Source: Ranitomeya imitator
Lineage: Eukaryota
Assembly: GCF_032444005.1 (NCBI RefSeq)
Contig: NC_091285.1
Coordinates: forward strand, 670,964,001-671,028,000
DNA: 64,000 bases
Direction of reading: 5' to 3'
A program made the position numbers and the translations under genes. The notes below the pieces were generated by a model, which saw nothing but the letters and a program-made list of their open reading frames with translations, searched no databases and was not told the origin of the DNA. Each line of letters begins with the position of its first letter. Positions within the stretch are counted from its first letter, which is position 1. Of the stretch, positions 9,484 to 48,334 are shown piece after piece.

Positions 9484-9875
9484 ATGCTGGCAGTTTCTCG
9501 CTGTTATCAGATGGTGCCCCCCGCCCACGTTTTAGGAGGAGACTGCAGTCAGGACGACCTCGTATGGAGGATCGGGAATGCCGTCTGAAGACGCTGCTGC
9601 TGCGAGTTGGAGACCTCGGACTTGGCTATGACTCTGAAGAGACCGTCCTATTCAAGTACTGCGGTGGCGGATGTGCGCGATCCCGTACAAACCACGACCT
9701 GACTCTAACACTGCTTCTGCAGAAGAGCGACCTCCCTTCTCTTCTGGAGGAGAAAATATTTGGAGGGCCCTGCTGTCGCCCCACGCACTATGAAGACGTT
9801 GCCTTCCTGGATGACAGTCACCGGTGGCACACAGTGGAAAAGCTGTCGGCGGCAGCGTGTGGCTGTGTGGGGTAA
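9484..9875 (+). CDS. PSPN: Persephin (GDNF-family ligand), last coding exon with pro-region end and mature domain
   Basis: Acceptor tctctttacAG at 9482-9483, phase 1. Reads RPRFRRR (furin-type site), then CRLKTLLLRVGDLGLGYDSEETVLFKYCGGGC...GPCCRPTHYEDVAFLDDSHRWHTVEKLSAAACGCVG* with the cystine-knot cysteine pattern. Tail-to-tail with ALKBH7 as in human. Signal-peptide exon not located. Confidence 0.9.
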
Positions 9876-15171: not shown

Positions 15172-15370
15172 CTTGTGACTGCGCACTGCATTCTGGGATG
15201 GGCAGGGAGCGCTACTCAGGAAGTGCCCGAAGTAACCAATCAGATCTCAGCTCTCTTTGTAGCAAGGCACTTTGGAAAATGAAATGTGTTACCTGATTGG
15301 TTGCCATTTTTATCATCTTCCCCCCCTCCTCACTGTAACTTGTTCATAGTTTATGGGACTTGTAGTCCTC
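15172..15370. promoter_or_regulatory. CpG-associated promoter of ALKBH7, likely bidirectional with the SSX2IP-like gene
   Basis: YY1-like AAGATGGCGGC over the ATG, ETS-like CAGGAAGTG (~15217), CCAAT boxes in both orientations (~15236, ~15296) and ZNF143-like GGGACTTGTAGTC at 15355-15367. Confidence 0.65.
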
Positions 15371-15599: not shown

Positions 15600-17262
15600 C
15601 ATCTGCAGTGCCCCCATAATAATAGCGATATCCAGAGTGCCCCCATAATAACAGCGATATCCACAGTACCCCCATAATATCACCGATATCCACAGTGCCC
15701 CCATAATAACAGCGATATCCACAGTGCCCCCATAATAACAGCGATATCCACAGTGCCCCCATAATAACAGCGATATCCACAGTGCCCCCATAATAACAGC
15801 GATATCCACAGTGCCCCCATAATAACAGCGATAGCCACAGTGCCCCCATAATAACAGCGATATCCACAGTGCCCCCATAATAACAGCGATATCCACAGTG
15901 CCCCCATAATAACAGCGATATCCACAGTGCCCCCATAATAACAGCGATATCCACAGTGCCCCCATAATAACAGCGATATCCACAGTGCCCCCATAATAAC
16001 AGCGATATCCACAGTGCCCCCATAATAACAGCGATATCCACAGTGCCCCCATAATAACAGCGATATCCACAGTGCCCCCATAATAACAGCGATATCCACA
16101 GTGCCCCCATAATAACAGCGATATCCACAGTGCCCCCATAATAACAGCGATATCCACAGTGCCCCCATAATAACAGCGATATCCACAGTGCCCCCATAAT
16201 AACAGCGATATCCACAGTGCCCCCATAATAACAGCGATATCCACAGTGCCCCATAATAACAGCGATATCCACAGTGCCCCCATAATAACAGCGATATCCA
16301 CAGTGCCCCCATAATAACAGCGATATCCACAGTGCCCCCATAATAACAGCGATATCCACAGTGCCCCCATAGTAACAGCGATATCCACAGTGCCCCCATA
16401 GTAACAGCGATATCCACAGTGCCCCATAGTAACAGCGATATCCACAGTGCCCCCATAATAACAGCGATATCCACAGTGCCCCCATAATAACAGCGATATC
16501 CACAGTACCCCCATAATAACAGCGATATCCACAGTGCCCCCATAATAACAGCGATATCCACAGTGCCCCCATAATAACAGCGATATCCACAGTGCCTCCA
16601 TAATAACAGCGATATCCACAGTGCCCCCATAATAACAGCGATATCCACAGTGCCTCCATAATAACAGCGATATCCACAGTGCCCCCATAATAACAGCGAT
16701 ATCCACAGTGCCCCCATAATAACAGTGATATCCACAGTGCCCCCATAATAACAGTGATATCCACAGTGCCCCCATAACAGTGATATCCACAGTGCCCCCA
16801 TAATAACAGTGATATCCACAGTGTCCCCATAATAACAGTGATATCCACAGTGCCCCCATAATAACAGTGATATCCACAGTGCCTCATAATAACAGTGATA
16901 TCCACAGTGCCCCCATAACAGTGATATCCACAGTGCCCCCATAATAACAGTGATATCCACAGTGTCCCCATAATAACAGTGATATCCACAGTGCCCCCAT
17001 AATAACAGTGATATCCACAGTGTCCCCATAATAACAGTGATATCCACAGTGCCCCCATAATAACAGTGATATCCACAGTGCCTCATAATAACAGTGATAT
17101 CCACAGTGCCCCCATAATAACAGTGATATCCACAGTGTCCCCATAATAACAGTGATATCCACAGTGCCCCATAATAACAGTGATATCCACAGTGTCTCCA
17201 TAATAACAGCGATATCCACAGTGCCCCCATAACAGTGATATCCACCGTGCCCCAATAACAGC
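15600..17262. repeat. 29-bp minisatellite (CAGTGCCCCCATAATAACAGCGATATCCA), about 57 copies
   Basis: Period measured 15722 to 15751; source of the spurious long ORFs here. Confidence 0.97.
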
Positions 17263-17439: not shown

Positions 17440-17530
17440 GGGGACAGTGATGATAATGTGTGCAAAACTGTAAAGCGCTGCGGAATATGTTAGCGCTATA
17501 TAAAAATAAAGATTATTATATTATTATAAT
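17440..17530 (+). mobile_element. LINE/SINE 3' tail fragment (..GCGCTGCGGAATATGTTAGCGCTATATAAAAATAAAG-(ATT)n)
   Basis: Reverse complement of 41350-41432. Confidence 0.6.
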
Positions 17531-18295
17531 GACCGCACCTCGTGAACGCAGCCTCAGGACACCTCCGCACAGGGTGGACTTGCTGCAGATTTCACCCTCT
17601 GCGGTGCCGCATACAGTGACGCCCGTGTTCCTGGCGCAGACCTATGGGGGGGCCGTAACGCTTCTATTTCACCTATGGAGATGGTGGTACGTTAGAGATG
17701 AGAGAATCCATTCACAAGACCTAGGGCCCTGTCTAGGTGTGTGATTACCTGTCAGGCCTAATTTTGCCTCAGCAGTTCAGGAGTTAATAGTGTGCAGCTG
17801 ATCCCCACAGGGCAATTAGAGGGAGTTGTTATATATCACCACAGACATGGCAGCCATTTTTCTGTAGTTTACTTTGACACTGGCGACCATAAGTCAGCAG
17901 CGTTGTAGAAGACAAATCTAATACTGCGCTGTAGCTGCGCCTTCTCCCAAGAGCTCACAATCAGCAGACACTGGTAAGGAGTGCTGTGTCTTATAGTCCC
18001 GTCAGTCGTTTTTTTTCCAAAACGTGGCAAAAACCTCAATGACCCCAAAGTGTGAACACTCCCTGTGCTGCCCTACTGCACGTGATGGCCTCACTGACTG
18101 CTATGGAAATTACTTCTATTGACCTTGGTTGTCATTTGTTTTAGTGCATTTGTATATGGAAATATTGTAGCTGGATGGTGTTTACTGTATAGAGTCCACG
18201 GACACTAATTACTAATGTGCCAGCTGCCGAAAATAACCGTCCTGTGTAGCCTAGGTGCCAGGGAAACATCAGGAAGCCTTGGAGGGGGATTATTG

Positions 18296-18905
18296 GAATA
18301 AGCGGTTACAGGGTAATAAGAGGATCAGGAGCTGGGTTACTGTAATAAGAGGTTACAGGGTAATAAGAGGATCAGGAGCCGGGTAACTGTAATAAGAGGT
18401 TACAGGGTAATAAGAGGATCAGGAGCCGGGTTACTGTAATAAGAGGTTACAGGGTAATAAGAGGATCAGGAGCCGGGTTACTGTAATAAGAGGTTACAGG
18501 GTAATAAGAGGATCAGGAGCCGGGTTACTGTAATAAGAGGTTACAGGGTAATAAGAGGATCAGGAGCCGGGTTACTGTAATAAGAGGTTACAGGGTAATA
18601 AGAGGATCAGGAGCCGGGTTACTGTAATAAGAGGTTACAGGGGTAATAAGAGGATCAGGAGCCGGGTTACTGTAATAAGAGGATCAGGAGCCGGGTTACT
18701 GTAATAAGAGGGTACAGGGGTAATAAGAGGATCAGGAGCCGGGTTACTGTAATAAGAGGGTACAGGGGTAATAAGAGGATCAGGAGCCGGGTTACTGTAA
18801 TAAGAGGTTACAGGGGTAATAAGAGGATCAGGAGCCGGGTTACTGTAATAAGAGGATCAGGAGTCGGGTTACTGTAATAAGAGGATCAGGAGCCGGGTTA
18901 CTATA
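18296..18905. repeat. 47-bp compound minisatellite (17 + 30 nt subunits sharing GTAATAAGAGG)
   Basis: Period measured 18428 to 18475. Confidence 0.95.
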
Positions 18906-19303
18906 ATATTAAAAAAAAATAAAAAAATCAGCGCAATAGTGAAGATTAAAACACACAAATGATGCCAGATTAACCACAATGTAACTGTGGAATCTTTTAT
19001 GGAAACTGGGGTTGCAATGCATATTGTCATGATTAAGTTATATTTTAATTATTTTTTTTTCACTCCAATTGGATTAGTTAGTGAATATTTAATTATATTT
19101 TTTGGAGAAATCATAAATATTGGTCTTCTTTGAATTCATTGGGTTACTGTAAAAAGTGTCACGAGCTGGGTTAATGTTTAGTTTTTCAAGTTTAGGGATA
19201 CTAGGAGACATTTTATGGATTTAGATTAACAATAACCCTAATGTCCATTTGTTTTTTTCCCTTTTTGTGACGATTCTCTGCCCTATAAGAGGTATTAGGA
19301 GCC

Positions 19304-22300
19304 ATGCATCGCTCGTCAGGGATGTCAGACAAAAATGTCCGTGAACTTCTGTCAGAGAATACGGAGCTGAAGAAATTCCATGAGCAGATGAGGAGAGAAG
19401 TGCAGGCCATCCTCGGCAGACATGAAGGCGTCCTCAGCGTGGTGACTAGAGATGTATGTCTGTCACGTCACAACCTCCTATTCCACCGTGAATGTCCACC
19501 TGTAAGTTTATTTTTACCTATGATATGTCGTTCAGGATTCAACAGCAGTAAACAAGCGTACGGGAGCCGGACGTACGAGACCCAACCGTGTTGGGGATGT
19601 TGGGTTAACAGCAAGCCTAAAGAAACAGTGGAACAGCCTCAAGCAGCTGGTGGAGATCCTGGAAGCTCGAGGTGAGGAGAAGAAACTAATTCTACTCATT
19701 GTGTGGAATTGATGGACACAGGCTTTGTAGCAATGTGTCCTTAGGCTGGCATAGCCAACAGTTCGATGTTTGATGCTTTTGTCAAGGCTTCACCTTATTT
19801 ACTTTTCTTCTCTGTAGCGACGCAGGCCAATGTGATTAGCGTGACTGACCATGAGAAGGAACTGACCCGACTCAAGAAGGAGGTAGAGGAGCTTAAAGAA
19901 GAGCTAGGACAGAGCCAGGAGTTGATCACTCAACAGCAACAGCTATTACAGGTCTGCGGGGTGCACGGATGGGGCGATACAGGATGTTGAGGGTTTCGTT
20001 TATTGCCTGATTGGCAATTTTGCATCATGGATCAGATAATATAGGTTATACGAAGATGGAAGTGTGCTTGTATAGGCCATTGAGATGGAGGGGGGTAATT
20101 TTTTCTTTTTTTTTTTTTTCTTTTAAGTGCATGGGTATTGGGATCAAGGGGGTATGGAAGCTTGATTGTTTGGCTGATGGCAAGAAAGCAGAGCCAGTGA
20201 CTGCAATGGTTGCTTGTGGAAAAAAGGAGCCAATGGCTGCAATGGTTGATGGTGGCAAAGTGGAGTCAATGGTGGCAGTGGTTGATGGGAAAGTGGAGCC
20301 AATGGTGGCAGTGGTTGACAATGAGAAAACAGAGCTTGTGGTGGCGATGGTTGATTGTGAGTAATAGGGTCCAATGGTTGACGGTGGGAAAGTGGAGACA
20401 ATTATGGCAATGGTTGACGGTGGGAAAGTGAAGCAATGGTGGCAATGGTTGACTTTATGAAAGCGGAGACAATGGCGGCAATGGTTGACGGTGGGAAAGT
20501 GAAGCCAATTTTGGCAATAGTTGAAAGTGGGAAAGAGAAGCCAATGGTGGCAATAGGCAGACTTCTGGACCCACTGAGCTCAGGTTGTAAGAGATCAAAA
20601 TACTTATACCAGTCTTTTCCAGGGCATAAATGCATATGGTGCCAGCCAAAAGGGAGTGATAACCAGTAAGGAAACCATTGTTAGAATATATTTATTAACC
20701 CTGTTCTGGAAACATTGAAGGTTTTTCTATCCATGTCTTGCCCAGGACCAGTTGATGCCACTGCCTGGTGAGGGTCAGCAATCTCCTCTCTGGGATGCAT
20801 ACTTCTTGGAAGAACAGCTGAGATTACAACAAGACCGTGCGGCCTTCGAGGAGCATAAGCTGGCCTTTCAGGATGAGCGGGATAAGTTTACGGAGGCGGC
20901 TATCCGTCTGGGAAGAGAGGTAACAGCAGAATCATTGCTTATGTAACCTCATTATGATAATAGGACGGGGCTCAACAACTTGATCTCCAAATGTTAGATC
21001 CATGTTGTCAGACTAAACTAATCTTCTGATAAAGTGGAAGTCAACTAGTCCATAGTTAAGATGAAACCAAATGTGGGGAGGATCTCCTCCCCCCCCCCCC
21101 TTCCCCATTGCTGCCATAGCCCTCAATTCTTGAGAACTACATAACCTGTCCGTCTTGGGATCTCTTCCATTTCCCAGCAGCAAGGCTTTGTTAACCAGTG
21201 AGTAATGTTTTCTGCAGCGTCTCCAGTTTAAGGCCGATCAGGCTCTTTTCATGAAGCAGCAGTTTTTGAGCATGACCCCTAGTCTGGGGACACCTCCGTG
21301 GAAGAAGACTCCTCCGTGGTCATCACTTAGTGAGTACGCTTATTTCCTGAGGTTGTGTATAGGGCATGGCAGGTATTTGGAACAAAATACTTGACAAGTT
21401 GGATTATAGCCTAATTGACTCTTTGTTTTTACGCTTCACCACGACAGCACCCACAATGAGAGAGGGACCCGCCCATAGGAACAGGAAACCTACAGAGATA
21501 AAAAGGGCGCTCCTCCTCTCCTCCTCAGTTGGTTTCCTGTTCTTATCGGAAATCCCTGGAATACCTACATGGACGGAGGTGGTTGGAGCACCTCCAGATT
21601 ACCTGAGCCTGTGCACTCGCCTGTGTGGTTTCCGTGCGAACAGCAGGGGCTGCGGCGTGAGTAGCAGCGTCGGGGGAGCCACTGCATGCTGCCTCCCCCC
21701 TCGTCTGATCACATTCCTGGCAGGTTCCGGGCAGCAGGCCCGACCTATGGAGTGGAGGACGCAGAAGCGGTCGCTTCTAGGAGGTGGCGCCGGCGGCATC
21801 TCCTGGGTAAGTGCGCTCTGCCTCACTGAACCGGAAGTAGTGGGATCACTTCTGGTTCACGGCCCCGGCGCGCTGGGAAAAAAAAAGCCGCACAGTTTAA
21901 ATTTGGAGCCGGGACACAGCAATCGTGCTCAGAATGGCGTCTCCGGTGCAGGAAGAGCATCCACTAGCAGTGGAGCAGGATAGCGCTGGCAAGGACAGCA
22001 GCGTAAAGGCTCAGTCTGCATCAAAGCCTTTGAGAAAGTGGTTGCTCTGCTAATGGGTCTGACACTCATACAAGAAGAAGTAGAGATACGGATCTACTTA
22101 GACTCCGCACAGCGTCTCCACCTCCAAGACCGGTATAATGAATGCTTCACTGGGTGAGTGTATATAATCCTCTACCTATAAGCTGATCCCTTCCTTCTCT
22201 ATCCCTCTCCCCATGGGCTAAGAAAACCAGTAAATCGAAGCATAAGGAGTGCACCGTGTGTACAGCCCCTGCCCGATTCATATCCAAAAAGGTTGTGTCC

Positions 22301-25300
22301 AAGCTGCATAAATCAAACCTTACAGGACGAGGCTGCGGTTACAAGCACTAATATCAGGGCCATAATTAGGCAGGAGATCCAATCTTTGGGATCAAAAAGC
22401 CTAAAAAAACAAGAAAGCAAAATCTTTCCCTCGTTTCTCGTTTAGAGTCTGAGGAGGGTTTAATCCGGTCCTCTAATACCTCGGGATCATCATCCAGTTC
22501 TTCTGAGGATGAGGGCGGCGCATGCTTTCCGCTTGATAGTATAGACAATCTTATAAAATCAGTGAGAAACACTATATGGGTTGTCCAGACACTAAAGGGG
22601 TAAGATCAGCTCAGGATATCATGTTCGCAAGCCTAGGTCGCAAAAAAACGGCTAGCTTTCCCAGTTGTTTCCGCCATCAAAGACCTTGTAAAAAAAAAAA
22701 ATGGGACAAACAAAGGAAGGGGTTTCTCCCATCCTCTTCTAAAAGGCGTTACCCCTTCAGTGATGGAGTTAAGTATGGTCCAAGGTTCCAAAAGTGGATG
22801 TGGCGGTGGCATCCACCTCGAAACAGTCATCTCTCCCTGTGGAAGATGCAGGAATCTTACTAGACCCATTAGACTGTAAAACCGAAGCTCTTCTTAAAAG
22901 GTCTTGGGTGACAAATACAGGAGCCTTTAAGCCCGCCATATCAAGTACATGTACAGCTAGGTCATTATTAGTATGGAAAGAACAGCTGGAGCAACAGGTA
23001 AAAGGCAAAGTGACGAGAGACAAAATCTTACAAGCAGTTCCATTGATTAGAAGTGCTGCGGCATTCTTAGCTGATGCTTCAGCAGATTCTCTAAGGCTGG
23101 CAGCAAGATCAGCGGGCCTTGTCAATGCAGCTCGTCTAGCCCTCTGACTGAAAGGATGGAAGGGGGATGCACAGTCTAAATCTAGATTATGTACAATCCC
23201 GTGCCAGGGTGAGTTCCTGTTTGGAAAGGTTCTTGATGACCTACTCAATAAAGCAGGAGAAAGAAGGAAGGGATTTCCTAAACAGTTTCTTCCTTCTTAT
23301 GGGAGAGCGTTTAGAAGACGGCCATTTAACAGAAGGAGGCCGTATGAGCCGCAAAGAGATCGTTGGGAAACTAAGGAAACAAAACCGAAAGGTGCCTTAT
23401 TCAGTAACCCCGAAACATCTAGACGTGGTAGATACCCTTAGTAATGAAATCCCGGTGGGTGGAAGACTGAAATTTTTCCATCGACAGTGGGAACACATAA
23501 CCTCAAATCAGTGGATCCTTTGCATAGTTAGATCTGGACTAAAATTAGAGTTCTTTAAGCTACCACAGGATACTTTTATTATAACATCAGTGAAAGCGCT
23601 GGAACAGCAAAAAGCGCTTCAGTTAGAAATTCGAAGCCTTTTGGCTAAGAATGTTCTCATAGAAGTACCAAGAAATCAGGAAGGGAGGGGATTTTATTCT
23701 CCTTTATTTCTGGTTCCAAAACTGGATGGTACTTTTCGTACTATAATAAATCTAAAAAAAAGAATTCCCTTTTACATGAACACACCTTTAAAATGGAATC
23801 AACAAGGTCTACTATTAAACTTTTGTTTCCTAGGTGCTTTATGACGGGTCTAGATTTGAAGGATGCGTACCATCTTCCCATTCATGCAGAACACCAACAA
23901 TACCTCAGAGTAGCGGTAAATCTACAGGGCCGGATCCGTCACTTCCAATTTACAGCCATGCCATTCGGCCTTTCCATGGCTCCTCAGGTTTTCACAAAAG
24001 TTATGCTCGAGGTGATGGCTTATCTGCGTCATCAGGATACGTTAATTGTGCCTTATCTAGATGACTTCCTAATAATTGGAAATTCAGCCTCACAATGTAA
24101 AGAACGCTTGACTAATACCATTTCATCGTTACAGGCTTTAGGTTGGATTGTGAACTTCAAAAAATCCAGACTACATCCGGAAACCCTTCAGTCCTTCCTA
24201 GGACTAATCTTGGACTCTGAAAGTCAAAGATGTCTCTTACCAGAAACCAAAAAAAAAAAACATAATCTCAAAAGTTACTATGGCAAGGTCTAATCCTCAA
24301 ATGTCCCTGAGATGCCATGTCTCTCTTGGGTTCACTCTCCTCCTGCATTCCTGCGGTTCAATGGGCCCAATATCATACTAGAGACTTACAACACCAGATT
24401 CTTTATACACAATCACATTGCCATGGTCATTTAAATACAAATATTACCCTGTCTAAAGACATGCTTGATTCACTCCTTTGGTGGTTAGATAAAACCCATT
24501 TGTCCAGAGGAATCTCATGGACGATAACACCCTCGAAATTAGTCACTACTGATGCAGGTCCAGAGGGGTGGAGGGCCCATCTGGATCAAAATATAGCTCA
24601 AGGCCGCTGGAATTCTGAAGAAATTCAGCAGTCCTCCAACTGGAAAGAACTAAATGCGGTTTATTATGCCTTGAATTTTTTCCTTCCCCAGCTCCGAGGA
24701 TCTCATATCAGAATCCTGTCAGACAATACGACGGTCGTCACATATTTAAATCGTCAAGGCGGAACGCGATCGGGAAGTCTGTGTTCAGTGGCAAACATCT
24801 TCAACTTGGCAGAACCCAATTTTCTATCACTCACAGCTCTCCATATCAGAGGAGTAGAAAACTCAAAGGCCGACTTCCTAAGTCGCCACACGCTCCGCCA
24901 GGGAGAATGGACTCTCAATCCTCAAATATTCAAGAGCATAGTGGACATATGGGGTCTTCCACAAATAGATTTGTTTGCAACCAGGAACAACAGACAGGTA
25001 CCAATATTCGCCTCCTTAAATACAGCAGATCATCCAGATATGATAGACTCGCTCCAGTATCCATGGAAATACGATCTGGCCTATGCTTTCCCACCAATGA
25101 TGTTAATCCCGTTAGTCATCAAAAAGATAAGGGAAGAGAAAGCAAGGGTGATATTGATAGCACCATTTTGACCAAAAAGGCCCTGCTTCTCCTGTCTTTG
25201 AGGGAAGTCAGTTTGCGATCCCTGGATTCTGCCAATGATCCCAGACCTACTGTCTCAGGGTCCATTCTACCACCAGCAAGTGAAAAGTCTTCACCTAACG

Positions 25301-28300
25301 GCGTGGAACTTGAGGCAAATACTAACGTTAAGGGTACCGTCACACAGTGGCACTTTGATCGCTAGGACGGCACGATCCGTGACGTTCCAGCGATATCGTT
25401 ACGATCTCGCTGTGTCTGACACGCTACTGCGATCAGGGACCCCGCTGAGAATCGTACGTCGTAGCAGATCGTCTGAAACTTTATTTTGTCGCTGGATCTC
25501 CCGCTGACATCGCTGAATCGGCGTGTGTGACACCAATTCAGCGATGTCTTCACTGGTAACCAGGGTAAACATCGGGTTACTAAGCGCAGGGCCGCGCTTA
25601 GTAACCCGATGTTTACCCTGGTTACCAGCGTAAACGTAAAAAAACAAACATTACATACTTACCTTCAGCTGTCTGTCCCCGGCGCTGTGCTTCTCTGCAC
25701 TCCTCCTGCATCCTGTGTCAGCGCCGGCCAGCCAGAAAGCACAGCGGTGACGTCACCGCTCTGCTTTACGGCTGACCGGCGCTGACAGTGCAGAGGAAAG
25801 CACAGCGCCGGAGGACAGACACAGAATGTAAGTATGTCATGTTTTGTTTTTTACGTTTACGCTGGCAACCAGGGTAAACATTGGGTTACTAAGCGCGGCC
25901 CTGCGCTTAATAACCCGATGTTTACCCTGGTTACCAGGGACTTCGGGATCGTTGGTCGCTGGAGAGCTGTCTGTGTGACAGCTCTCCAGTGACCAAACAG
26001 CAACGCTGCAGCGATCGACATCATTGTCGTATCGCTGCAGCGTCGTTTCAGTGTGACGGTACCTTAAGAGGGTTTTCTCGAGAGCTAATTAACACATTAC
26101 TGCTAAGTAGGAAGAAGTCTACAACTTTAATATATAGCAGAGTATGGAGAAAATTCCTCACCTTCTATACAAAACTTTTCTCTAGCAAGGTTCCTATTAA
26201 AGCTATCCTAGAATTTCTACAAAAAGACCGAGCTCATGGCCCATCAGTCAATACTTTAAGAGTTCAGGTATCTGCTTTAGGAGCCCTTTATAGTGCTAAC
26301 ATAGCTGGTGACAGGTGGATAGCAAGATTTATTGGAGCATGTGAAAGGTGTATGGAGCGCCCCCAGACACAGGGCCACGCGTTTCGGTACCGGGCCTCTC
26401 TGCTTCGGTTCTGAGGCTGTCACGGTGGCTAGACCCGGTCCATGACCCTGCTAAGGGGCGTCCAATGTTATGAAAGGTAATTCAGTACCACAATGGACAT
26501 AGAGGTCAGCGCACATACAGTGACCTGGCAATAACCCAAAAAACAAGAACGAGCTCTGAGACGTGGGAACTCTGTTGACCGCAATCCCTAATCCTCTCCA
26601 ACCACACTAAAGGCAGCCGTGGATTGCGCCTAACGCTCCCTATGCAACTCGGCACGGCCTGAGAAACTAGCTAGCCTGAAGATAGAAAATAAGCCTACCT
26701 TGCCTCAGAGAAATACCCCAAAGGAAAAGGCAGCCCCCACATATAATGACTGTGAGTTAAGATGAAAAGACAAACGTAGAGATGAAATAGATTTAGCAAA
26801 GTGAGGCCCAACTTTCTGAACAGAGCGAGGATAGGAAAGGTAACTTTGCGGTCAACACAAAACCCTACAAAAACCACGCAAAGGGGCAAAAAGACCCTCC
26901 GTACCGAACTAACGGCACGGAGGTACACCCTCTGCGTCCCAGAGCTTCCAGCAAGCAGAAAAAAACAAATTGACAAGCTGGACAGAAAAAAACAGAAAAC
27001 AAATGGCAAAGAGAAACTTAGCTATGCAGAGCAGCAGGCCACAGGAACGATCCAGGAGGAAACAGGTCCAATACTAGAACATTGACTGGAGGCCAGGATC
27101 AAAGCACTAGGTGGAGTTAAATAGAGCAGCACCTAACGACATCACCACATCACCTGAGGAAGGAAACTCAGAAGCCGCAGTACCACTTTCCTCCACCAAC
27201 GGAAGCTCACAGAGAGAACCAGCCGAAGTACCACTTGTGACCACAGGAGGGAGCTCTGCCACAGAATTCACAACAGTCCAATAAAGGTGGTGGTGGTACA
27301 GTCTGTCAGGGGTTCGTGACGCCACCTGTGGTGTTCGGTCAGGGTGACCGACGCTGCTGTGGGGTCCGCTGGGGTGATGGAATGGCGGCTGGATGGTGTA
27401 CCTTCCCACAGGTGAAGTATGTCCCCAGGGCTTCCCAGTGATGTAGGTGGCGATGGTGTGAGGTGCAGGCAATAACGAGGACACAAGGTTGCAGTCTCTT
27501 TACCTCTTTACTGAAGGCTTCAAGATCCTCAATCCAGAGTACGTTTAACAGGGCTATCAGAGACCGGCCGGTCCGATGGGCACTTCGAGTTTCCTTCGCA
27601 GATGGAAATCGTTGCCTACCACTAGCGCCTGTGTGTTGTAGTGTTACCCTGCTGAGCATTCGGAATAGTCCTCACAACTGCTGTTCTTGTTCGTTCGTTC
27701 GTTCGTTCTCTACAGCGCTCTTTCTCTTCAGTTCCAGATGTTGCTAGTTTCTCGTCCCCAGGTATATTTTGGCTAGGACGCACCCGTATGACGGGAAGGC
27801 TTGGAGGTCTTCCGGGACCCTAGAGACGCCCCTCTCCCAATGTTGCCCCCTATGTCTACGTAGGAAATTTAAGGTAGACAGCCAACCTATAATTAACTGT
27901 CCGGCGGAGTTTGAAGTAAGGCCTGAAGTCAGTTACTCCTACGGTGTTCCGGCCACAGACTACGCGCCTCAGTAAGATGTTGCCTCTCTCTCTCGGCACG
28001 ACTCTTACTGGCTCTCCTTTATGCTTGATCTCGTTTACACGGTTCCACAATATCCTTCCCTTTGTGTCTCTCTCCTGGATACCGCCGCAGGGTGTGCAGG
28101 CGCGGTTCCGTTACGTTCTGCTCTGTTCGCTAGGCACCTGCCAGGTTCCCACGCCTGACAGGGATCCCCTGTGCCTTCTCCCTGCAACACCCCCTGCCAC
28201 GGGATGTTGCCTGAATCCGACCCAGTGAGCTTCTGACTAACTTCCTCCCCAGCCCCTAATTTTACCAATGTGAGGAGTGGCCCAATAAATAAAGCCTTTT

Positions 28301-31300
28301 TCTCCCCCTAGTGGCCGGAGTGTGAAGTGTAATGTGTTCTGGTGATACCTGGTCAGGAGAATCCCTTCAGTGCCATCAGACGTACCATCGCTCCCCTTAG
28401 TGGCAGAGTGTCATACTGCAATGACCAGATCTCTACATTCTATTTCTCTGATAAATATAGCCAGAAGAATAGGAGACACCCAGGCCCTCTCCATAGACCC
28501 TCCATTCTTAATTACAAACCAGGACAGGGTAGTTCTCAAACCAGATCCATCATATCTCCCTAAAGTAGCAACACCCTACCATAGATCTCAAGAGATTTTT
28601 CTGCCTTCCTTTTATGATAATCCATCAAATCCACAGGAAGAGAAGCTACATATGTTGGATGTGAAAAGAACAGTCTTAAAGTATATAGAGAGAACCCAGT
28701 CCTGGAGACAGAGTAGGGCTCTGTTTATATCTTTTCAGGGTCACCGAAAAGGCCACGGGGTCACAAAGGCTACTTTGTCTCGCTGGATCAGAGATGCCAT
28801 CTGTCTAGCCTACCTAACTAAAGGCAAAGATCCTCCACAAGAAGTAAAAGCACATTCAGCTCGGGCCGTATCCTCCTCTTGGGCGGAGAATAAAGACATC
28901 TCCATCGAGCTTATACGTAAGGCCGCAACCTGGTCGTCGCCTTCAACATTTTATAGACATTATAGTCTTGATCTTTGATCTATCTTCTACATCTGACTTG
29001 GCATTCAGGAGAGCTGTCCTCAGCATGGTGATCCCACCCAGGTGAAGGTTCTCTGTAAATCTCTTTGTGGGTGCTGTCGTGGCGAAGGGTAAAAAGCTGG
29101 ATTACTTACCGGTAATATCCTTTTAATGAGCCACGACAGCACCCTGTCACTTCCCACCCTAGTTAGTTATGTATAGTTATTTATACAAAATATTCTCATG
29201 GGTGAATATAAATAAGATGAAATGTACAAACAAATTACGGACATATATACTAATTTAACAACGGTGGTTCCTCTTGTACTCTGAAACAACTGAGGAGGAG
29301 AGGGGGACCGCCCTTTTTATATCTGTAGGTTTCCAGGTCCCTCTCTCACTGTGGGTGCTGTCGTGGCTCATTAATAGGGCATTACCGGTAAGTAATCCGG
29401 CTTTTTCAAGGCTTGTGGGGCAGTGATTGGCATATATATATTCCAGAACCCATCAACTTAATTATTCCGGCCATACATTGTATATAAATATTGGACAAAC
29501 CGCAGATTTGGGCACAACTGGTCAACTGTATATCGAGTTTAGGGGTGTCCTGGCTCCCCGCTACATATGTTGGGTTAAAAAATAAAGCATTGGGCATGTT
29601 GAATTTCTACAAGCCCAATCCTTTGTCCTTTAGATCCAATACTGCCTGGCTTTTTACCTTCACTAGCTACAAGCCCAGCGGGTATGTGGGTGTGCGGAGA
29701 AATGGCTGTCCACTAAATGACCATTCGGCTGACATCCAAGGGGGTTATGACCACCTTTACTGATCAATTTTACAAATTTTTCTGTTGTAGGTCTGTTGGC
29801 CCAAATTTGGTTTTAAAGCATTAATAGCGTATACTGTATATTCACAGCTGCGGACACCCCAAATAATCCCTCCAGTAACCCCAAACAGCAAGCCACAGCC
29901 AATCAGTCCTGCGGCACTAAACCTCGCAGAAAGCTTCCTTCTGCAGATCCTGGGACCCCAAGCACGGCGGAGCTGTACAGGGTCCTGAGACTGGCGCCCC
30001 CCAGCAGGTGACGAGATCAGACATTACTTACCCAGCCATTATAAACTGATAGCAATAATAAGTCTACAGGAAATTACAATAATCGAAAATTGGCATCTGC
30101 CATATTGTGCACAGATTACCTGCGCTCACCTGTATGCATCAAAGGGTAGAGTAGAAATGCATCTTGTGTAGTCTGATCTGTTACTAATGCAGACCTAATC
30201 CTTCTCACAGCTGAGCGTTTGCTGCTTTATTTCCAGTCTACACAATGCTGTATAAGACTGATCTGTAGCTCAGAACAGGACGGAGATTTTCACTGCAGCA
30301 ACTGTTGTGGCTCATAAAGAAAAGACTACTGCAAAGTCATTTTTATTAATATATGTATACCTGCGTAATGTTGTTCCCAGGTCCATGAAGACTCATAGAT
30401 GTGAGAGCAGCTGTCGTCAAGACACAGAATCAGAGGAGAGTAGCCAGAGATGGAGTGACAGCCTGTCACCAAGTAGCGAGTGTNNNNNNNNNNNNNNNNN
30501 NNNNNNNNNNNNNNNNNNNNNNNNNNNNNNNNNNNNNNNNNNNNNNNNNNNNNNNNNNNNNNNNNNNNNNNNNNNNNNNNNNNNNNNNNNNNNNNNNNNN
30601 NNNNNNNNNNNNCAATAATATAACTACTATAATACTGCCCCTATGTACAGGAATATAACTACTGTAAGGCTGTGTGCACACGCTGCGGATCCGCAGTTTT
30701 CCGAAAGTTTACAGTACCATGTAAACCTAAGGGGAAAAAAACCGCTGTGCACATGCTGCGGAAAATGCAGCGCGGAAACGCTGCGGATTTTTTTCCGCAG
30801 CATGTCAATTGTTTGTGCGGATTCTGCAGCAGGTTTCAACCAGCACCAATAGGAAAGTGCTGGTGAAAACCCGCAGAAGAAACCGCTAGAAAATCCGCAG
30901 TGAAAACCGCAGTGGTTTTGCACTGCGGATTTTCCAAATCCGCTGCGGAAAAATCCGCAGGAAAATCCGCAGCATGGGCACATACCCTTATACTGCTCCC
31001 TATGTACAAGAATATACTATAATACTGTCACCTATGTACAAGAATATAACTACTATAATACTGCCTCTATGTACAAGAATATAACTACTATAATACTGCT
31101 CCTATGTACAAGAATATAACTACTATAATACTGCTCCTATGTACAAGAATATAACTACTATAATACTGCCCCTATGTACAAGAATATAACTACTATAATA
31201 CTGCCCCTATGTACAAGAATATAACTACTATAATACTGCTCCTATGTACAAGAATATAACTACTATAATACTGCCCCCATGTACAAGAATATAACTACTA

Positions 31301-33352
31301 TAATACTGCTCCTATGTACAAGTGTTGGGTTGAACAATTAATAAAATGTTCACTCTCTAGTTGCCTACTCCTGGCCTAATGGATATTGATCAGGTGCGCA
31401 CTAAAGAAATAAACATATGACACAGTCAGATGTAAACTCTCCTTGATCAATCTATGGCTCAGCTCCAAGGGGTTTATTTAGTCAGGACACAGATTTATAT
31501 AACCCCTGTAAAGGGGGCTCGGTTAACTTTAAAATGGGAGTGATCGGATGCATTCCATTGGTTAGTGGGTTGGGCAATGAGCAAGTCCATGGTCGGATCC
31601 ATGAGGTCATCAGGGTGGGTTGGTCCATGAGGTCATCAAGGTGGGCATCACTGTGGGTGGAACCATGAGGTCATCAGGGTGGGCGTTATCTTGGATACAA
31701 GCACATGGCTCTGATATAGGAAATGGCAGCCATCTTTAGGGTCTCACTTTAATCTGAGAAAGCTTAAGTAAGGTTAAACAATACACGTTATGGGTCACTT
31801 GTCTCAACCTCTTATGTCTTGAGGTTAATTAAGTATTTGATCTTATGGCTCTCCTCAACACAAGAATATAACTACTATAATACTGCCCCCTATGTACAAG
31901 AATATAACTACTATAATACTGCCCCCTATGTACAAGAATATAACTACTGTAATACTGCTCCTATGTACAAGAATATAACTACTATAATACTGCCCCTATG
32001 TACCGGAATATAACTGCTATACTACCGTAGCTTACAAGTTTAGACCTGTTTTGGATTTTTTTTCTCCCATAAATCCTTCTTTGATTTTTATGAACTCTCC
32101 TTCTAGCTCCAGAGCTGCACGCTCTTCCTCAGTTCGTGATTCCCTTTAAGCTGAGCATGACCCCTTATCTTCGCCCCAGGCCCACCCCAGTAAGCTTGCC
32201 TCGCAGCCACTCTGAGCCTCGCACACCCGCTACCGCAGAGCTCTTTAGAGCCTTGCATCTTACTCCAGCTGACAGGTGAGGGGTAAAAAAGAGAAACTGT
32301 AGGAAATGTTAGGGTTTTGTGCACCTCTGGGTGGCAGGGTAAATTTGGTGATGGGTGATATTTATTCTTGGGGAGGAAGTTTAGTTTTTGTGCTGACTTT
32401 TCTCTTTTGGGCTTGTAGCATACCTTCAGTGAAGAAGGGGCGTGGAGATGAATTAAGAAGATCCATCCTCCATCATTCCCACCGCAGAGCCAGTATCTCC
32501 AAGGCTGCGGAGTCGCCTTGTTGCAATGACGATGTCAGGAGACGTGAGGAAACTCCGCACTGTCCCTATGAGTTGGATTCTCTGTCTTCTGAAGATAGCA
32601 GACAGACGCACGGAGAAGCGGACACTCCCAATAGTGATGTGCTGTCCTCGACTAAGGAGAACTCTGAATGTTTTGACAATGACTCTTTGTACAGAGTGAC
32701 TCCTCTTCATGACGCCACCTACGTCTACCATGGAGAGAACGTACCTCATCTTAGGGTTGATGACCACTGCTGCAGCCAACATGGGGACCAAAGCTTGTGG
32801 CCATGTCAAGAGCTGGAGAATAAATTTTCCACTAGGGCTTCTTCTAATAGCACCATTAATAAAAAGCCAAAAGTGACCCTCCAGGATGACGACCGCAGAT
32901 CACGAGATACCCTTCATCCTCAGGATGCTTGCAGAAGTGGGTCACAAGAGAGACCACTCTTTAAAGACCAATGTAGAACCAGATCCAAGGAAGATGTTCG
33001 CCGTAGAAGTCTCCCCTGCCACCAGTCCAAAGTCATTCTCCATTTTGAAGATGATGGTACCATGGAAAGAAACAAGGCACCTCCTCATGGCACATCCAAG
33101 AGGAGAAGATCATTGGACTCTCTTCACAAACATGGCTGCAAAGCCCAGTCGAAAGAGAGCCATTCTCTCCATAAGAGATCATCTCGTCCCCACAGAGACT
33201 CCTTGTACACCTCAGGTCCGGGATGTTCACCCCTTCATTTACATCACTCATGTCCATCTGCTCGAAATGCTACACCATGCACTACTAAATATGTAGTGTC
33301 ATCAAATCTTTATGCTGACCTGTTCACCCATGTTCAGGATTGCTCCTTCTAA
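19304..33352 (+). CDS. SSX2IP/ADIP (afadin- and alpha-actinin-binding protein)-like coiled-coil protein; exons 19304(ATG; acceptor ~19290)-19453, 19536-19671, 19818-19951, 20746-20919, 21218-21329, 29848-30007, 30381-(gap at 30484), 32419-33352
   Basis: GT-AG junctions with continuous phases (0, 1, 0, 0, 1, 2). Peptides ENTELKKFHEQMRREV, LTASLKKQWNSLKQLVE, VISVTDHEKELTRLKKEV..ITQQQQLLQ, DAYFLEEQLRL..FTEAAIRLGRE and FMKQQFLSMT follow, in order, the recalled SSX2IP motifs (ENAELKK, LTNSIRKQW, VISRQDHEQE, FTEAAIRLGLE, KQQFLNMT). The link across the N-gap to the last exon is inferred. Confidence 0.82.
22215..23450 (+). pseudogene. DIRS ORF1 (gag-like with CxxC..CxxC zinc finger), frameshifted
   Basis: KSKHKECTVC / LCPSCI, then DVAVASTSKQSSLPVEDAGILLDPLDCKTEALLK..LVNAARLAL*; in-frame TGA at 23145-23147. 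Confidence 0.75.
23344..25171 (+). pseudogene. DIRS RT / RNase H / DAM-methylase-like ORF, frameshifted
   Basis: VGGRLKFF, GFYSPLFLVPK, LDLKDAY, AMPFGLSMAPQVFTK, PYLDDFLI, VTTDAG, SSNWKELNAV, SDNTTVVTYLNRQGGTRS, HIRGVENSKADFLSR, PQIDLFAT and YAFPP across ORFs 23167-23844, 23793-24293 and 24317-25171. Confidence 0.92.
25332..26064. mobile_element. PIF/Harbinger-type MITE inserted in the DIRS YR gene
   Basis: TAA|GGGTACCGTCACAC...GTGTGACGGTACCT|TAA. Removing it restores ATA CTA ACG TTA AGA GGG TTT (ILTLRGF). Confidence 0.92.
26353..28430. mobile_element. LTR-like element (starts TGGAGCGCCCCC) inserted in the DIRS YR gene, right end truncated
   Basis: 27843-28430 is homologous to 54930-55548, which ends ..GACCAGGTCTCTGGGGCGCTGTA (inverse of the left terminus); this copy stops at ..GACCAGATCTCT. 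Confidence 0.7.
26466..27275 (-). mobile_element. Solo LTR (810 bp, TGTT..AACA) nested in the previous element
   Basis: Flanked by the direct repeat GTCCAA at 26460-26465 and 27276-27281; TATTTAA TATA-like box on the - strand. Confidence 0.85.
30668..30987. mobile_element. Harbinger-like MITE (GGCTGTGTGCACAC.. / ..GCACATACCC) with internal CCGCAG repeats
   Basis: Imperfect TIRs with TAA and TTA flanks. Confidence 0.7.
31323..31860 (-). mobile_element. Solo LTR (538 bp, TGTTG..CAACA), ERV-like, 4-bp TSD CAAG
   Basis: CAAG at 31319-31322 and 31861-31864. On the - strand: U3-type repeats (CCATGAGGTCATCA x3), CCAAT, TATATAA and AATAAA in LTR order. Confidence 0.88.
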
Positions 33353-37379: not shown

Positions 37380-38405
37380 TCAGTAGTGTGTGTGGCCTCC
37401 ACGTGCCTGTATAATCTCCCTACAACGCCTGGGTATGCTCCTGATGAGGCGGTGGATGGTCTACTGAGGGATCTCCTCCCAGACCTGGACTAAAGCATCC
37501 GCCAACTCCTGGACAGTCTGTGGTGCAACGTGATGTTGGTGGATGGTGCGAGACATGATGTCCCAGATGTGTTCAATCGGATTCTGGTCTGGAGAACGGG
37601 CGGGCCAGACCATAGCTTCAATGCCTTCATCTTGCAGGAACTGCTGACACACTCCAGCCACATGAGATCTGGCATTGTCCTGCATTAGGAGGAACCCAGG
37701 GCCAACCGCACCAGCATATGGTCTCACAAGGCGTCTGAGGATCTCATCTCGATACCTAATGGCAGTCAAGCTACCTCTGGCGAGCACATGGAGGGCTGTG
37801 CGGCCCTCCAAAGACATGCCACCCCACACCATTACTGACCCACTGCCAATCTGGTCATGCTGAAGGATGTTGCAGGCAGCAGATCGCTCTTCACGGCGTC
37901 TCCAGACTCTGTCACGTCTGACACATGTGCTCAGTGTGAACCTGCTTTCATCTGTGAAGAGGACAGGGCGCCAGTGGCAAATTTGCCAATCCTGGTGTTC
38001 TGTGGCAAATGCCAAGCGTCCTGCAAAGTATTGGGCTGTGCGCACAACCCCCATCTGTGGATGTTGGGCACTCAGACCATCCTCATGGAGTCGGTTTCTA
38101 ACCGTTTGTGCATACACATGCACATGTGTGGCCTGCTGGAGGTTATTTTGCAGGGCTCTGGCAGTGCTCCTCCTGTTCCTCCTTGCACAAAGGCTAAGGT
38201 AGCGGTCCTGCTGCTGGGTTGTTGCCCTCCTACGGCCCCCTCCACGTTTCCTGGTGTACTGGCCTGTCTCCTGGTAGCACCTCCAGCCTCTGGACACTAC
38301 GCTGACAGACACAGCAAACCTACTTGCCACAGCTCGCATTGATGTGCCATCCTCGATGAGCTGCACTACCTGAGCCACTTATGTGGGTTGTAGAGTCCGT
38401 CTCAT
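37380..38405 (-). pseudogene. DD34E Tc1 transposase pseudogene (2 in-frame stops, frame otherwise intact)
   Basis: ATG at 38405, TAA at codon 9, TAG at 37461-37463, natural stop at 37380-37382; FTDESRF, QDNARSH and NPIEHIW motifs with 34 residues between the second D and E. Confidence 0.9.
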
Positions 38406-41344: not shown

Positions 41345-41376
<32 letters not shown>

Positions 41377-41470
41377 CTTTATTTTTATATAGCGCTAACA
41401 TATTCCGCAGCGCTTTACAGTTTGCACACATTACTATATGAAAACAGTTACAGAAAAGGGAAAACTTTAA

Positions 41471-43059: not shown

Positions 43060-47875
<4,816 letters not shown>

Positions 47876-48110: not shown

Positions 48111-48334
48111 GGCTACTACTTGTTAACCGCAATTTTATTGTAGCTGTGTAGGTGACAAAGTGTCAGTGTGTGGCTATGGCGGACTAGAAGCAGATAGACG
48201 CTACTACGGATATCATTCATGACATGTTTTACTTCACCACCAGCAAGTTGGAGTAGTCACCCACTTCCTGTTTTGCATGTTACTAGGCAACAGCCAGAGC
48301 CTAGAAAAGATTGTGCCCAGAGTGAACTCCTGAC

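What the first reader, a model, noticed from the sequence alone, without database searches (positions are those of the whole stretch)
19304..33352. SSX2IP-like paralog that appears to lack the N-terminal ADIP domain, at a locus where the human syntenic block has no such gene
Seen: at least 7 in-phase GT-AG exons whose peptides track the C-terminal half of SSX2IP (centriolar-satellite/Msd1 family). They start at a good Kozak ATG (GGAGCCATGC, 19304). The 4 kb back to the ALKBH7 start is satellite and repeat DNA in which I find no ADIP-domain exons. Known (from recall): human SSX2IP is on 1p22, the human CLPP-ALKBH7-PSPN block on 19p13.3 has no such gene, and 1p21-31 and 19p13 share many whole-genome-duplication paralog pairs (PKN1/2, GIPC1/2, CNN1/3). 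Inference: this is an ancient ohnolog lost in mammals and remodelled into a truncated coiled-coil protein, which could act as a modulator or competitor of SSX2IP at centrosomes or cilia.
Basis: partly seen in the sequence, partly recalled or inferred. Interest (0 to 1): 0.78.

Follow-up and report, generated by a model that had tools for sequence, protein, structure and literature searches.

The report
Frog SSX2IP paralog without ADIP domain
This frog gene is a real, expressed and conserved copy of an old vertebrate duplicate of the centrosome gene SSX2IP; in amphibians it has lost the front (ADIP) half, and in frogs and the axolotl it has also been flipped, so that in frogs it lies head-to-head with its neighbour ALKBH7.

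Summary
It has a non-coding first exon (about 17890-17973) and nine in-phase GT-AG coding exons (19290-33352). The ATG is at 19304 and the CDS is 2070 nt (689 aa).

- **Assembly gap:** it starts two bases after the donor of exon X, so it is intronic. Ortholog proteins run across it with no residue missing.
- **Expression:** spliced RNA-like contigs of three related species confirm the exon A-E joints. They begin only 79-85 nt upstream of exon A, in exon 0, which has no ATG and an in-frame stop.
- **Orthologs:** 33 amphibian orthologs listed (28 anuran species, three salamanders, two caecilians), mostly named "uncharacterized protein", lack Pfam ADIP.
- **Identity:** trees, AU tests and synteny show it is not SSX2IP proper. 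It is the ortholog of an unstudied paralog that lies between CLPP and ALKBH7 and keeps ADIP in shark, turtle, python and platypus.
- **Inversion:** frogs and axolotl carry the gene inverted. In frogs it lies head-to-head with ALKBH7.
- **Selection:** dN/dS against Engystomops is 0.23.

The function is inferred only. The protein keeps the part of SSX2IP homologous to the γ-tubulin-complex-binding half, lacks most of the PCM1/satellite-targeting half, and has a long disordered tail. The gene is annotated in databases but I found no paper on it. Interest is moderate.

The parts
17890..17973 (+). Exon 0, non-coding 5' UTR exon (the start is approximate; donor GT at 17974-75)
   Evidence: Contigs of three related species carry 79-85 letters upstream of exon A. 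These letters match window 17945-17973. The exon holds no ATG and has an in-frame stop upstream of the ATG. Positions 17916-17979 are 81% conserved in Engystomops locus L003.
19290..19453 (+). Exon A with the start codon at 19304; homolog of turtle paralog exon 7
   Evidence: Acceptor AG at 19288-89 and donor GT. Joint seen in RNA-like contigs. tblastn with P0086 residues 268-311.
19536..19671 (+). Exon B
   Evidence: P0005 residues 51-105.
19818..19951 (+). Exon C
20746..20919 (+). Exon D, the most conserved part (FTEAAIRLGRE motif)
   Evidence: Exon D alone finds the anuran orthologs at E about 1e-22 and SSX2IP-family proteins at 1e-4 to 1e-6. It is 100% identical to Dendrobates tinctorius P0257.
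21218..21329 (+). Exon E (ends in phase 1)
29848..30007 (+). Exon F (first TAELYRVLRL motif); seen in frogs and salamanders only
   Evidence: The loose letters after exon E in three species match 29848 onward. P0005 residues 239-292. dN/dS 0.42.
30381..30481 (+). Exon X (acidic, serine-rich), ends in phase 1; donor GT 30482-83 abuts the gap
   Evidence: P0005 residues 281-326. Splice context. Per-exon identities.
30484..30612 (.). Assembly gap, intronic (intron X-G), flanked on the right by a 35-bp minisatellite
   Evidence: Not filled in.
32107..32275 (+). Exon G (second TAELFRAL motif); homolog of turtle exon 12
   Evidence: dN/dS 0.08.
32419..33352 (+). Exon H, last exon, 310 codons plus stop; predicted disordered tail that ends in the paralog-specific C-terminal motif
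   Evidence: 348-aa ORF. 64-84% identical to hyloid orthologs. dN/dS 0.22. Disorder predicted on the ortholog P0257.
12238..15186 (-). ALKBH7, divergent (head-to-head) neighbour; start exon inferred at 14818-15186
   Evidence: tblastn with the ALKBH7 part of P0100 hits 12238-14192 at E = 1.5e-28. ORFs.
15606..17258 (.). 29-bp satellite, 57 copies, between the two divergent genes
18290..18908 (.). 47/29-bp satellite inside intron 0
22500..29000 (+). Retroelement (reverse transcriptase; DIRS-like by my reading) inside intron E-F; limits are approximate
   Evidence: ORFs. RVT_1 at E = 5e-15.
43060..44983 (-). CLPP exons, convergent downstream neighbour
   Evidence: CLP_protease at E = 1.9e-29. 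ORFs.

Best explanation
**What it is (shown).** This is a ten-exon, expressed, selectively constrained protein-coding gene of a dendrobatid-like frog. It is the amphibian ortholog of an ancient jawed-vertebrate paralog of SSX2IP/ADIP/Msd1. In shark, turtle, python and platypus that paralog lies CLPP(+) > paralog(+), followed in the three amniotes by ALKBH7(+), and it carries an ADIP domain.

The frog gene keeps only the equivalents of ancestral exons 7-13. It has gained a non-coding first exon and two coding exons (F and X). Its last exon has grown from about 42 to about 310 codons.

The product (689 aa) starts at the position equivalent to SSX2IP residue about 256. It has four long helices in its first roughly 217 residues. 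The remaining roughly 470 residues are predicted disordered and carry three short conserved helical motifs: two TAEL[YF]R motifs and the C-terminal ADLLxQFLDxSF motif.

**How it arose (inferred from comparison).** The ADIP-coding 5' exons are missing in all three amphibian orders. A caecilian still has the ancestral orientation, whereas frogs and axolotl carry the gene inverted. In frogs it lies head-to-head with ALKBH7, so it is probably transcribed from the shared divergent promoter region.

**How it works (inferred, about one chance in three).** In human SSX2IP, residues 1-373 bind PCM1 and target the protein to centriolar satellites. Residues 373-614 bind the γ-tubulin complex and suffice for microtubule anchoring once they are brought to the centrosome. 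The frog protein is a natural counterpart of the second half. It probably dimerises through its coiled coil and binds the γ-tubulin complex or partners of that half without PCM1-dependent delivery. The new tail would supply its own targeting or regulation. It would then act either as a PCM1-independent anchoring factor or as a competitor of SSX2IP.
For: - **Gene model:** (all sites GT-AG, CDS 2070 nt).
- **Splicing and 5' end:**. The A-E joints appear in contigs of organisms A, B and C at about 93-95% identity, and in run X3 at 100%. The contigs start 79, 82 and 85 nt before exon A.
- **5' UTR:** no ATG, and an in-frame stop.
- **No ADIP:** Pfam ADIP is absent from six amphibian orthologs while positive controls score 52-145 bits. 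All 33 amphibian rows lack PF11559. No ADIP-like tblastn hit in the window.
- **Orthology:** trees; AU tests.
- **Synteny and orientation:**; neighbours in the window.
- **Exon-for-exon match to turtle exons 7-13:**
- **Constraint:** pooled dN/dS 0.23, with every exon below 0.5.
- **Homology to SSX2IP residues 264-591:** E = 1e-31.
- **Shared C-terminal motif:**
- **Fold:**
- **Domain map of human SSX2IP:** PMC3989863.
Against: - No experiment exists on this protein or on any member of its paralog clade (searches found no paper).
- The γ-tubulin-complex mapping comes from human SSX2IP, which is only about 35% identical over the shared part.
- The retained part also includes the equivalent of residues 264-373, which belong to the human 'N' construct. 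PCM1 binding is therefore not formally excluded.
- The caecilian state rests on two annotated models only. No DNA could be read, so the order of truncation and inversion is open.
- RNA support for the F-X-G-H joints in the window is indirect. It rests on contig lengths, loose ends and ortholog proteins.
- The runs are only guessed to be RNA, and their tissues are unknown.
- The C-terminal motif is degenerate in this species (ADLFTHVQDCSF) and in Dendrobates tinctorius.
Confidence: 0.8

Rival explanations
1. The ADIP exons exist but were missed. They could be hidden in collapsed satellite or in the assembly gap, or used from a distant alternative promoter, so the protein would really be full length.
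For: Two satellites and an N gap lie in or near the gene. Exon A has an acceptor, so it is not a first exon.
Against: - Transcript contigs of three species end 79-85 nt upstream, in a short exon with no ATG and an in-frame stop.
- The 28 anuran species listed give ADIP-less models, and every anuran model whose N-terminus I printed or aligned starts at the same Met, apart from the shorter isoform P0008 and the fragment P0006.
- The compact Engystomops locus (3.7 kb of coding exons, 3.3 kb from ALKBH7) has no room for such exons and no annotation of them.
- tblastn finds nothing.
- The gap lies downstream, in intron X-G.
Confidence: 0.04
2. It is the frog's true SSX2IP ortholog, or a recent amphibian duplicate of it.
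For: The best-characterised homolog is SSX2IP (35% identity).
Against: - Frogs have a separate ADIP-bearing SSX2IP inside the 100/100 SSX2IP clade.
- AU test p = 2e-54 against an amphibian duplicate, and p = 0.03 against a sister position to SSX2IP proper.
- Synteny with CLPP and ALKBH7 matches the amniote paralog.
Confidence: 0.01
3. It is a transcribed but decaying remnant with no function of its own.
For: Half of the ancestral protein is lost. Most of the product is predicted disordered. The C-terminal motif is eroded in this species.
Against: - The open frame is intact in 28 anuran species, including early-branching lineages such as Discoglossus, Bombina and pipids, and in three salamanders and two caecilians.
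- dN/dS is 0.23, with every exon below 0.5, including the new ones.
- 36 alignment columns are invariant across the three amphibian orders.
- Contig depth is high in three species.
Confidence: 0.03
4. It is functional but has taken on a new role. The retained coiled coil serves only as a dimerisation module, and the large new tail gives a role unrelated to γ-tubulin complexes or SSX2IP.
For: About 45% of the protein is a frog-specific tail under constraint, with conserved short motifs. Salamanders expanded a different region, and caecilians are only about 400 aa.
Against: The strongest conservation is in exactly the segment shared with SSX2IP and its C-terminal functional half. The invariant block is F188-E198 of P0257, the FTEAAIRLG motif.
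Confidence: 0.3
5. On origin: the inversion itself cut the gene in two in the common ancestor of frogs and salamanders, and caecilians lost or merely lack annotation of ADIP independently. The alternative is a single truncation in the amphibian stem followed later by inversion.
For: The inverted orientation coincides with the shortest N-termini, in frogs and axolotl. The caecilian keeps the ancestral orientation and about 55 more residues at the N-terminus.
Against: Two caecilian models also lack ADIP, so a single earlier loss is more parsimonious. No ADIP relic lies on the far side of the frog gene.
Confidence: 0.3

Closest known systems
SSX2IP / ADIP / hMsd1 (vertebrate centriolar-satellite and microtubule-anchoring protein)
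   Same: Homologous over SSX2IP residues about 264-591 (35% identity, E = 1e-31). The shared part includes the conserved coiled coils, the FTEAAIRLG block and a TSELF-type motif.
   Different: - A separate ancient clade.
- Lacks residues 1 to about 260, including the ADIP domain.
- Has a roughly 310-aa extra tail and a different C-terminus.
- Different chromosomal block.
[quoted passage not shown]
   Same: - Same clade (98/96).
- Same neighbours.
- One-to-one match of exons 7-13.
- Shared C-terminal DLLxxFLDxSF motif in tetrapods.
   Different: Those genes keep the ADIP domain and lie on the same strand as CLPP and ALKBH7. The frog gene has no ADIP, is inverted, and has extra exons F and X and a much larger last exon. 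None of these genes has been studied, as far as my searches show.
Anuran 'uncharacterized protein LOC...' models, for example Dendrobates tinctorius P0257, Xenopus tropicalis LOC100036665, X. laevis LOC108711716 and Rana temporaria LOC120933388
   Same: Direct orthologs. They share the start Met, the exon set and the length: 689 aa in D. tinctorius, at 83-100% identity per exon.
   Different: Species differences only. The databases give no name or family link. One model is mis-named 'serine/threonine-protein kinase fray2-like'.
The experimental truncation hMsd1-C (residues 373-614) of Hori et al. 2014
   Same: Keeps the γ-tubulin-complex-binding half and lacks most of the PCM1-binding half (PMC3989863).
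   Different: That is an artificial construct of the other paralog, and it delocalises unless fused to a PACT domain. The frog protein is natural, starts about 110 residues earlier and has its own long tail.

Membership tests
Pfam ADIP family (PF11559) | An ADIP domain of about 150 residues near the N-terminus | tested here: not met
   No exon of the window and none of six amphibian orthologs hits PF11559. The Anolis paralog scores 81.8 bits, frog SSX2IP 145 bits and platypus 52.7 bits. No tblastn hit in the window.
SSX2IP/Msd1 superfamily, by descent | Significant sequence homology of the C-terminal coiled-coil region | tested here: met
   Ortholog P0005 against marsupial SSX2IP gives E = 1e-31 over residues 264-591. 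Exon D alone finds family members.
SSX2IP proper (orthogroup of human SSX2IP) | Falls inside the SSX2IP clade | tested here: not met
   The frog protein is outside the 100/100 clade that holds the frogs' own SSX2IP. AU p = 0.03 and 2e-54.
CLPP-ALKBH7-linked SSX2IP paralog | Groups with the amniote paralogs in a tree | tested here: met
   Support 98/96 on the full-length tree and SH-aLRT 94 on the C-terminal columns only.
CLPP-ALKBH7-linked SSX2IP paralog | Lies between CLPP and ALKBH7 | tested here: met
   Window order: ALKBH7(-), gene(+), CLPP(-). The same neighbours occur in python, turtle, platypus, Discoglossus and Engystomops. The orientation is inverted in frogs and axolotl.
CLPP-ALKBH7-linked SSX2IP paralog | C-terminal motif DLLxxFLDxSF | tested here: inconclusive
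   The motif is present in nearly all amphibian and turtle members. The window reads ADLFTHVQDCSF, so the ends are kept and the middle is changed.
CLPP-ALKBH7-linked SSX2IP paralog | Shared exon boundaries | tested here: met
   Window exons A, B, C, D, E, G and H correspond to turtle exons 7-13. The exon D and E limits fall at the same residues, 403-461 and 461-499. Boundaries come from tblastn, so they are good to within a few residues.
Microtubule-anchoring factors that bind the γ-tubulin complex | Binding to the γ-tubulin complex, and centrosome or basal-body localisation | not testable with these tools
   Only the homology to the mapped human region is available.

The most novel reading that the evidence does not exclude
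Amphibians have kept, through the whole radiation of the group, a naturally 'headless' version of an unstudied second SSX2IP gene. It would be a γ-tubulin-complex-binding coiled coil freed from PCM1/centriolar-satellite delivery and given a new disordered tail. In frogs it would be rewired by an inversion onto the ALKBH7 divergent promoter. It would act as a satellite-independent microtubule-anchoring factor, or as a built-in antagonist of SSX2IP, in eggs, early embryos or multiciliated cells. In that case Xenopus work on SSX2IP has so far missed a partner.
Probability: 0.25. Interest if true: 0.6.

Novelty: new variant of a known kind. Interest (0 to 1): 0.45.

Why it matters
SSX2IP is a well-studied factor for centrosome maturation and cilia, and Xenopus is one of its main experimental systems. 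This work shows three things:

- Vertebrates ancestrally had a second SSX2IP gene, lying between CLPP and ALKBH7. My searches found no paper on it.
- Amphibians converted it into a protein that keeps only the half shown in human cells to bind the γ-tubulin complex.
- The remodelling is old and selectively maintained, and it is tied to a visible genomic rearrangement.

This gives a natural separation-of-function allele that can be tested directly in Xenopus. It is also a clean example of domain loss with promoter replacement. It is not a new kind of system: the gene is already annotated, though unnamed, in many frog genomes.

Tried and rejected
- **Pfam on single exons:** only sub-threshold coiled-coil noise such as Cnn_1N and NEMO. 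Not used.
- **The look-up of sequencing runs:** no run on record as RNA, and runs with the window's own species label held none of the words. Expression therefore rests on spliced contigs of relatives and one low-depth 100% match (X3).
- **Mutually exclusive exons F and G:** I first thought this because their phases do not fit. Rejected once exon X was found by comparison with P0005.
- **Inversion as the single cause of ADIP loss:** weakened by the caecilian, which has the ancestral orientation but no ADIP.
- **Exon 0 derived from a repeat:** the GCCATTTT-containing stretch looked similar near 31720, but blastn found no repeat copy of exon 0 in the window.
- **Teleost 'b' genes as fish orthologs of the paralog:** rejected. 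The two characiform extra copies that I tested, Hoplias and Pygocentrus, fall inside SSX2IP proper.
- **Look-ups with no result:** loci for Hymenochirus, Polypterus, X. laevis and Geotrypetes.
- **Literature searches with no result:** paralog names and LOC numbers. The 2015 Wdr8 paper has no domain mapping.
Full report
**1. Map of the window**

- A TGF-beta-type exon (persephin-like) lies at 9564-9875 on the plus strand.
- ALKBH7 is on the minus strand. tblastn confirms exons at 12238-14192, and a start exon is inferred at 14818-15186.
- A 29-bp satellite follows at 15606-17258, and a 47/29-bp satellite at 18290-18908.
- The gene in question lies on the plus strand from about 17890 to 33352.
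- Two Tc1-like transposase ORFs lie at 37.5-39.8 kb.
- CLPP exons are on the minus strand at 43.0-45.0 kb.

**2. Gene model**

Translation and splice-site inspection give nine coding exons, all bounded by AG and GT and all in phase:

| Exon | Coordinates | Note |
|---|---|---|
| A | 19290-19453 | ATG at 19304 |
| B | 19536-19671 | |
| C | 19818-19951 | |
| D | 20746-20919 | |
| E | 21218-21329 | |
| F | 29848-30007 | |
| X | 30381-30481 | |
| G | 32107-32275 | |
| H | 32419-33352 | ends in the stop codon |

The CDS is 2070 nt, or 689 aa. I first took F and G for mutually exclusive exons because their phases do not fit. Comparison with the Engystomops ortholog then revealed exon X between them, which restores the frame.

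In scripts I joined exons only to check phase and length. I sent no joined protein to any search, fold or tree. Those steps were done exon by exon, by reference, or with database orthologs as proxies.

**3. The assembly gap**

Exon X ends at 30481 in phase 1. The GT at 30482-83 is the last sequence before the N run (30484-30612). Exon G starts in phase 1.

The orthologs P0005 and P0257 align to X and G with exactly one residue between them, the split codon. The gap is therefore intronic and no coding sequence need be missing. Only the first two bases of the donor are visible.

A 35-bp minisatellite lies just right of the gap and is a likely cause of it.

**4. Transcript evidence**

One read-laying run was possible, on 18909-21399.

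- Contigs of three related organisms (about 93-95% identical) and one 100%-identical low-depth contig skip exactly the predicted introns between A, B, C, D and E, with GT..AG ends.
- The three long contigs (806, 2486 and 3203 nt) carry only 79, 85 and 82 letters upstream of exon A.
- Those letters match window 17945-17973, directly before a GTAAGG donor. This defines a non-coding exon 0.
- The letters after exon E match 29848 onward, the start of exon F.

The mature 5' UTR has no ATG and has an in-frame stop 23 codons before the start codon, so the protein cannot extend upstream in this transcript. The 3' part of exon 0 is 81% conserved in Engystomops.

The runs are only guessed to be RNA, but intron-less GT..AG-bounded contigs in three species are best read as mRNA.

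**5. Relatives**

Exon D alone, searched against 1.8 billion representatives, finds frog proteins of 640-720 aa at E about 1e-22. In these, the exon sits at residue about 144, the same offset as here. It finds SSX2IP-family proteins more weakly, with the exon at residue about 340-460.

The frog proteins are database models named "uncharacterized protein". A search with the Engystomops ortholog lists 28 anuran species, three salamanders and two caecilians, none with PF11559. Direct Pfam scans confirm this, with positive controls.

The closest matches are Dendrobates tinctorius (689 aa, 83-100% per exon) and Phyllobates, so the window comes from a dendrobatid-like frog.

tblastn with ten ADIP-bearing relatives finds no ADIP-like stretch in the 64 kb on either strand, while the downstream exons are found easily.

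**6. Orthology**

A search with the Anolis "A-like" protein shows a second family of ADIP-bearing genes. It occurs in squamates, turtles, alligator, platypus, coelacanth and sharks, beside SSX2IP proper. It also occurs in bichir, sturgeon and paddlefish.

- In a careful ML tree, SSX2IP proper is a 100/100 clade that includes the frogs' own SSX2IP. The frog proteins and axolotl join the amniote paralogs at 98/96.
- Using only the columns shared with the frog protein gives the same picture.
- The two characiform extra copies that I tested, Hoplias and Pygocentrus, fall inside SSX2IP proper.
- The AU test rejects an amphibian duplicate of SSX2IP (p = 2e-54) and, weakly, a position as sister to SSX2IP proper (p = 0.03).
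- Both clades contain cartilaginous and bony fishes, so the duplication predates jawed vertebrates.

**7. Synteny and orientation**

| Species | Arrangement |
|---|---|
| Python, green turtle | CLPP(+) > paralog with ADIP(+) > ALKBH7(+); in turtle then PSPN(-) |
| Platypus | CLPP(+) > paralog(+) > a 261-aa gene(+) > PSPN(-) > GTF2F1(-) |
| Whale shark | CLPP(+) > paralog(+) |
| Caecilian Rhinatrema | short paralog(+) > ALKBH7(+) > PSPN(-), the ancestral orientation |
| Axolotl | gene(+) convergent with CLPP(-) |
| Discoglossus | PSPN(+), ALKBH7(-), gene(+), CLPP(-); the 5' ends of ALKBH7 and the gene overlap |
| Engystomops | ALKBH7(-), then 3.3 kb, then gene(+) |

The window has the same arrangement as the two frogs. 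The gene is therefore inverted in frogs and axolotl, and it sits head-to-head with ALKBH7 in the frogs.

**8. What was lost and gained**

Window exons A, B, C, D, E, G and H match turtle exons 7-13 one for one. Exons 1-6 are gone. F and X are additions, and F repeats the TAEL motif of G. The last exon grew from 42 to 310 codons.

The N-terminal limit is graded:
- Caecilian models start at the conserved MKRKE just after ADIP.
- Salamander models start later.
- Frog models start inside the exon-7 equivalent.

A single ADIP loss in the amphibian stem, followed by inversion and further trimming in the frog-salamander lineage, is the most parsimonious reading. The caecilian state rests on annotation alone.

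**9. Constraint and fold**

Nei-Gojobori counts, taken exon by exon against the Engystomops locus and then pooled, give dS 0.68, dN 0.155 and dN/dS 0.23. Every exon is below 0.5.

Across 29 amphibian sequences, 36 columns are invariant. They are concentrated in the exon C-D coiled coil (the FTEAAIRLG block) and the first TAELY motif.

AlphaFold on the Dendrobates ortholog gives four confident long helices: residues 5-44, 72-98, 106-143 and 154-217. The rest has low confidence, apart from short helices at the two TAEL motifs and the C-terminal motif.

The C-terminal motif (ADLLxQFLDxSF) is shared from caecilians to turtles and is absent from SSX2IP proper. It is partly eroded in this species and in D. 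tinctorius.

**10. Function (inferred)**

The ortholog aligns with SSX2IP residues 264-591. In human cells, residues 1-373 bind PCM1 and localise to centriolar satellites. Residues 373-614 bind the γ-tubulin complex, are delocalised on their own, and rescue microtubule anchoring, spindle orientation and ciliogenesis when targeted by a PACT domain (PMC3989863).

The amphibian protein is thus a natural counterpart of the γ-tubulin-complex-binding half with a new tail. I propose that it binds the same or related partners without satellite delivery, either as an independent anchoring factor or as a competitor of SSX2IP. This is inference from about 35% identity to a different paralog. I give it about one chance in three.

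**11. Novelty**

The gene exists in many annotations without a name. I found no paper on the paralog clade or on the LOC identifiers. The finding is a new variant of a known family rather than a new kind of thing.

Noticed in passing
window 22500-29000 (+), inside intron E-F: A retroelement of about 6.5 kb with broken ORFs. RVT_1 scores E = 5e-15 at 23793-24290. A C-terminal ORF (28370-28978) looks like a tyrosine recombinase, so the element is probably DIRS-like.
   Followed up: partly
window 37461-38378 (-) and 38751-39818 (+): Two Tc1/mariner-type transposase ORFs (DDE_3 and HTH_Tnp_Tc3_2) lie between the gene and CLPP.
   Followed up: partly
window 30613-30670, 30990-31322, 31860-32025: A 35-bp minisatellite (ACAAGAATATAACTACTATAATACTGCCCCTATGT) flanks the assembly gap on its right side and recurs twice in the same intron. 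It is a likely reason for the gap.
   Followed up: no
window 18102-18175, matching L003 9018-9088: A 74-bp stretch in intron 0 is 84% conserved between this frog and Engystomops. That is as conserved as exon 0 itself, and the function is unknown.
   Followed up: no
window 19323-19349 (exon A): Transcript contigs of related organisms A and B lack 27 nt here, an in-frame loss of nine codons. Organism C appears to use an acceptor 9 nt further downstream, still before the ATG.
   Followed up: no
window 33314-33349 (end of exon H): The otherwise near-invariant C-terminal motif ADLLTQFLDCSF reads ADLFTHVQDCSF here and ADLLTPVSDCSF in Dendrobates tinctorius. Phyllobates keeps the consensus.
   Followed up: partly
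proteins P0263 (Dendrobates tinctorius X4) and P0272 (Xenopus tropicalis): Annotated isoforms in two distant frogs skip exactly exon D (58 aa, in frame), the most conserved block. This may be a regulated alternative isoform.
   Followed up: no
protein P0100 (Alligator mississippiensis): This gene model fuses the SSX2IP paralog with ALKBH7 (PF11559 plus PF13532). It is probably a read-through annotation artefact, and it also shows that the two genes are adjacent on one strand in alligator.
   Followed up: partly
protein P0250 (Dendropsophus ebraccatus): The ortholog is named 'serine/threonine-protein kinase fray2-like' in the database. Nothing in the sequence supports that name.
   Followed up: no
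window 48200-52600 (+) and 57970-60380 (-): Two long GC-rich, strand-skewed low-complexity repeat blocks give spurious ORFs of 300-800 aa.
   Followed up: no
window 17454-17530 and 41357-41433: A 78-bp element is repeated at 96% identity in inverted orientation, upstream of exon 0 and near CLPP. It is probably a short interspersed repeat.
   Followed up: no
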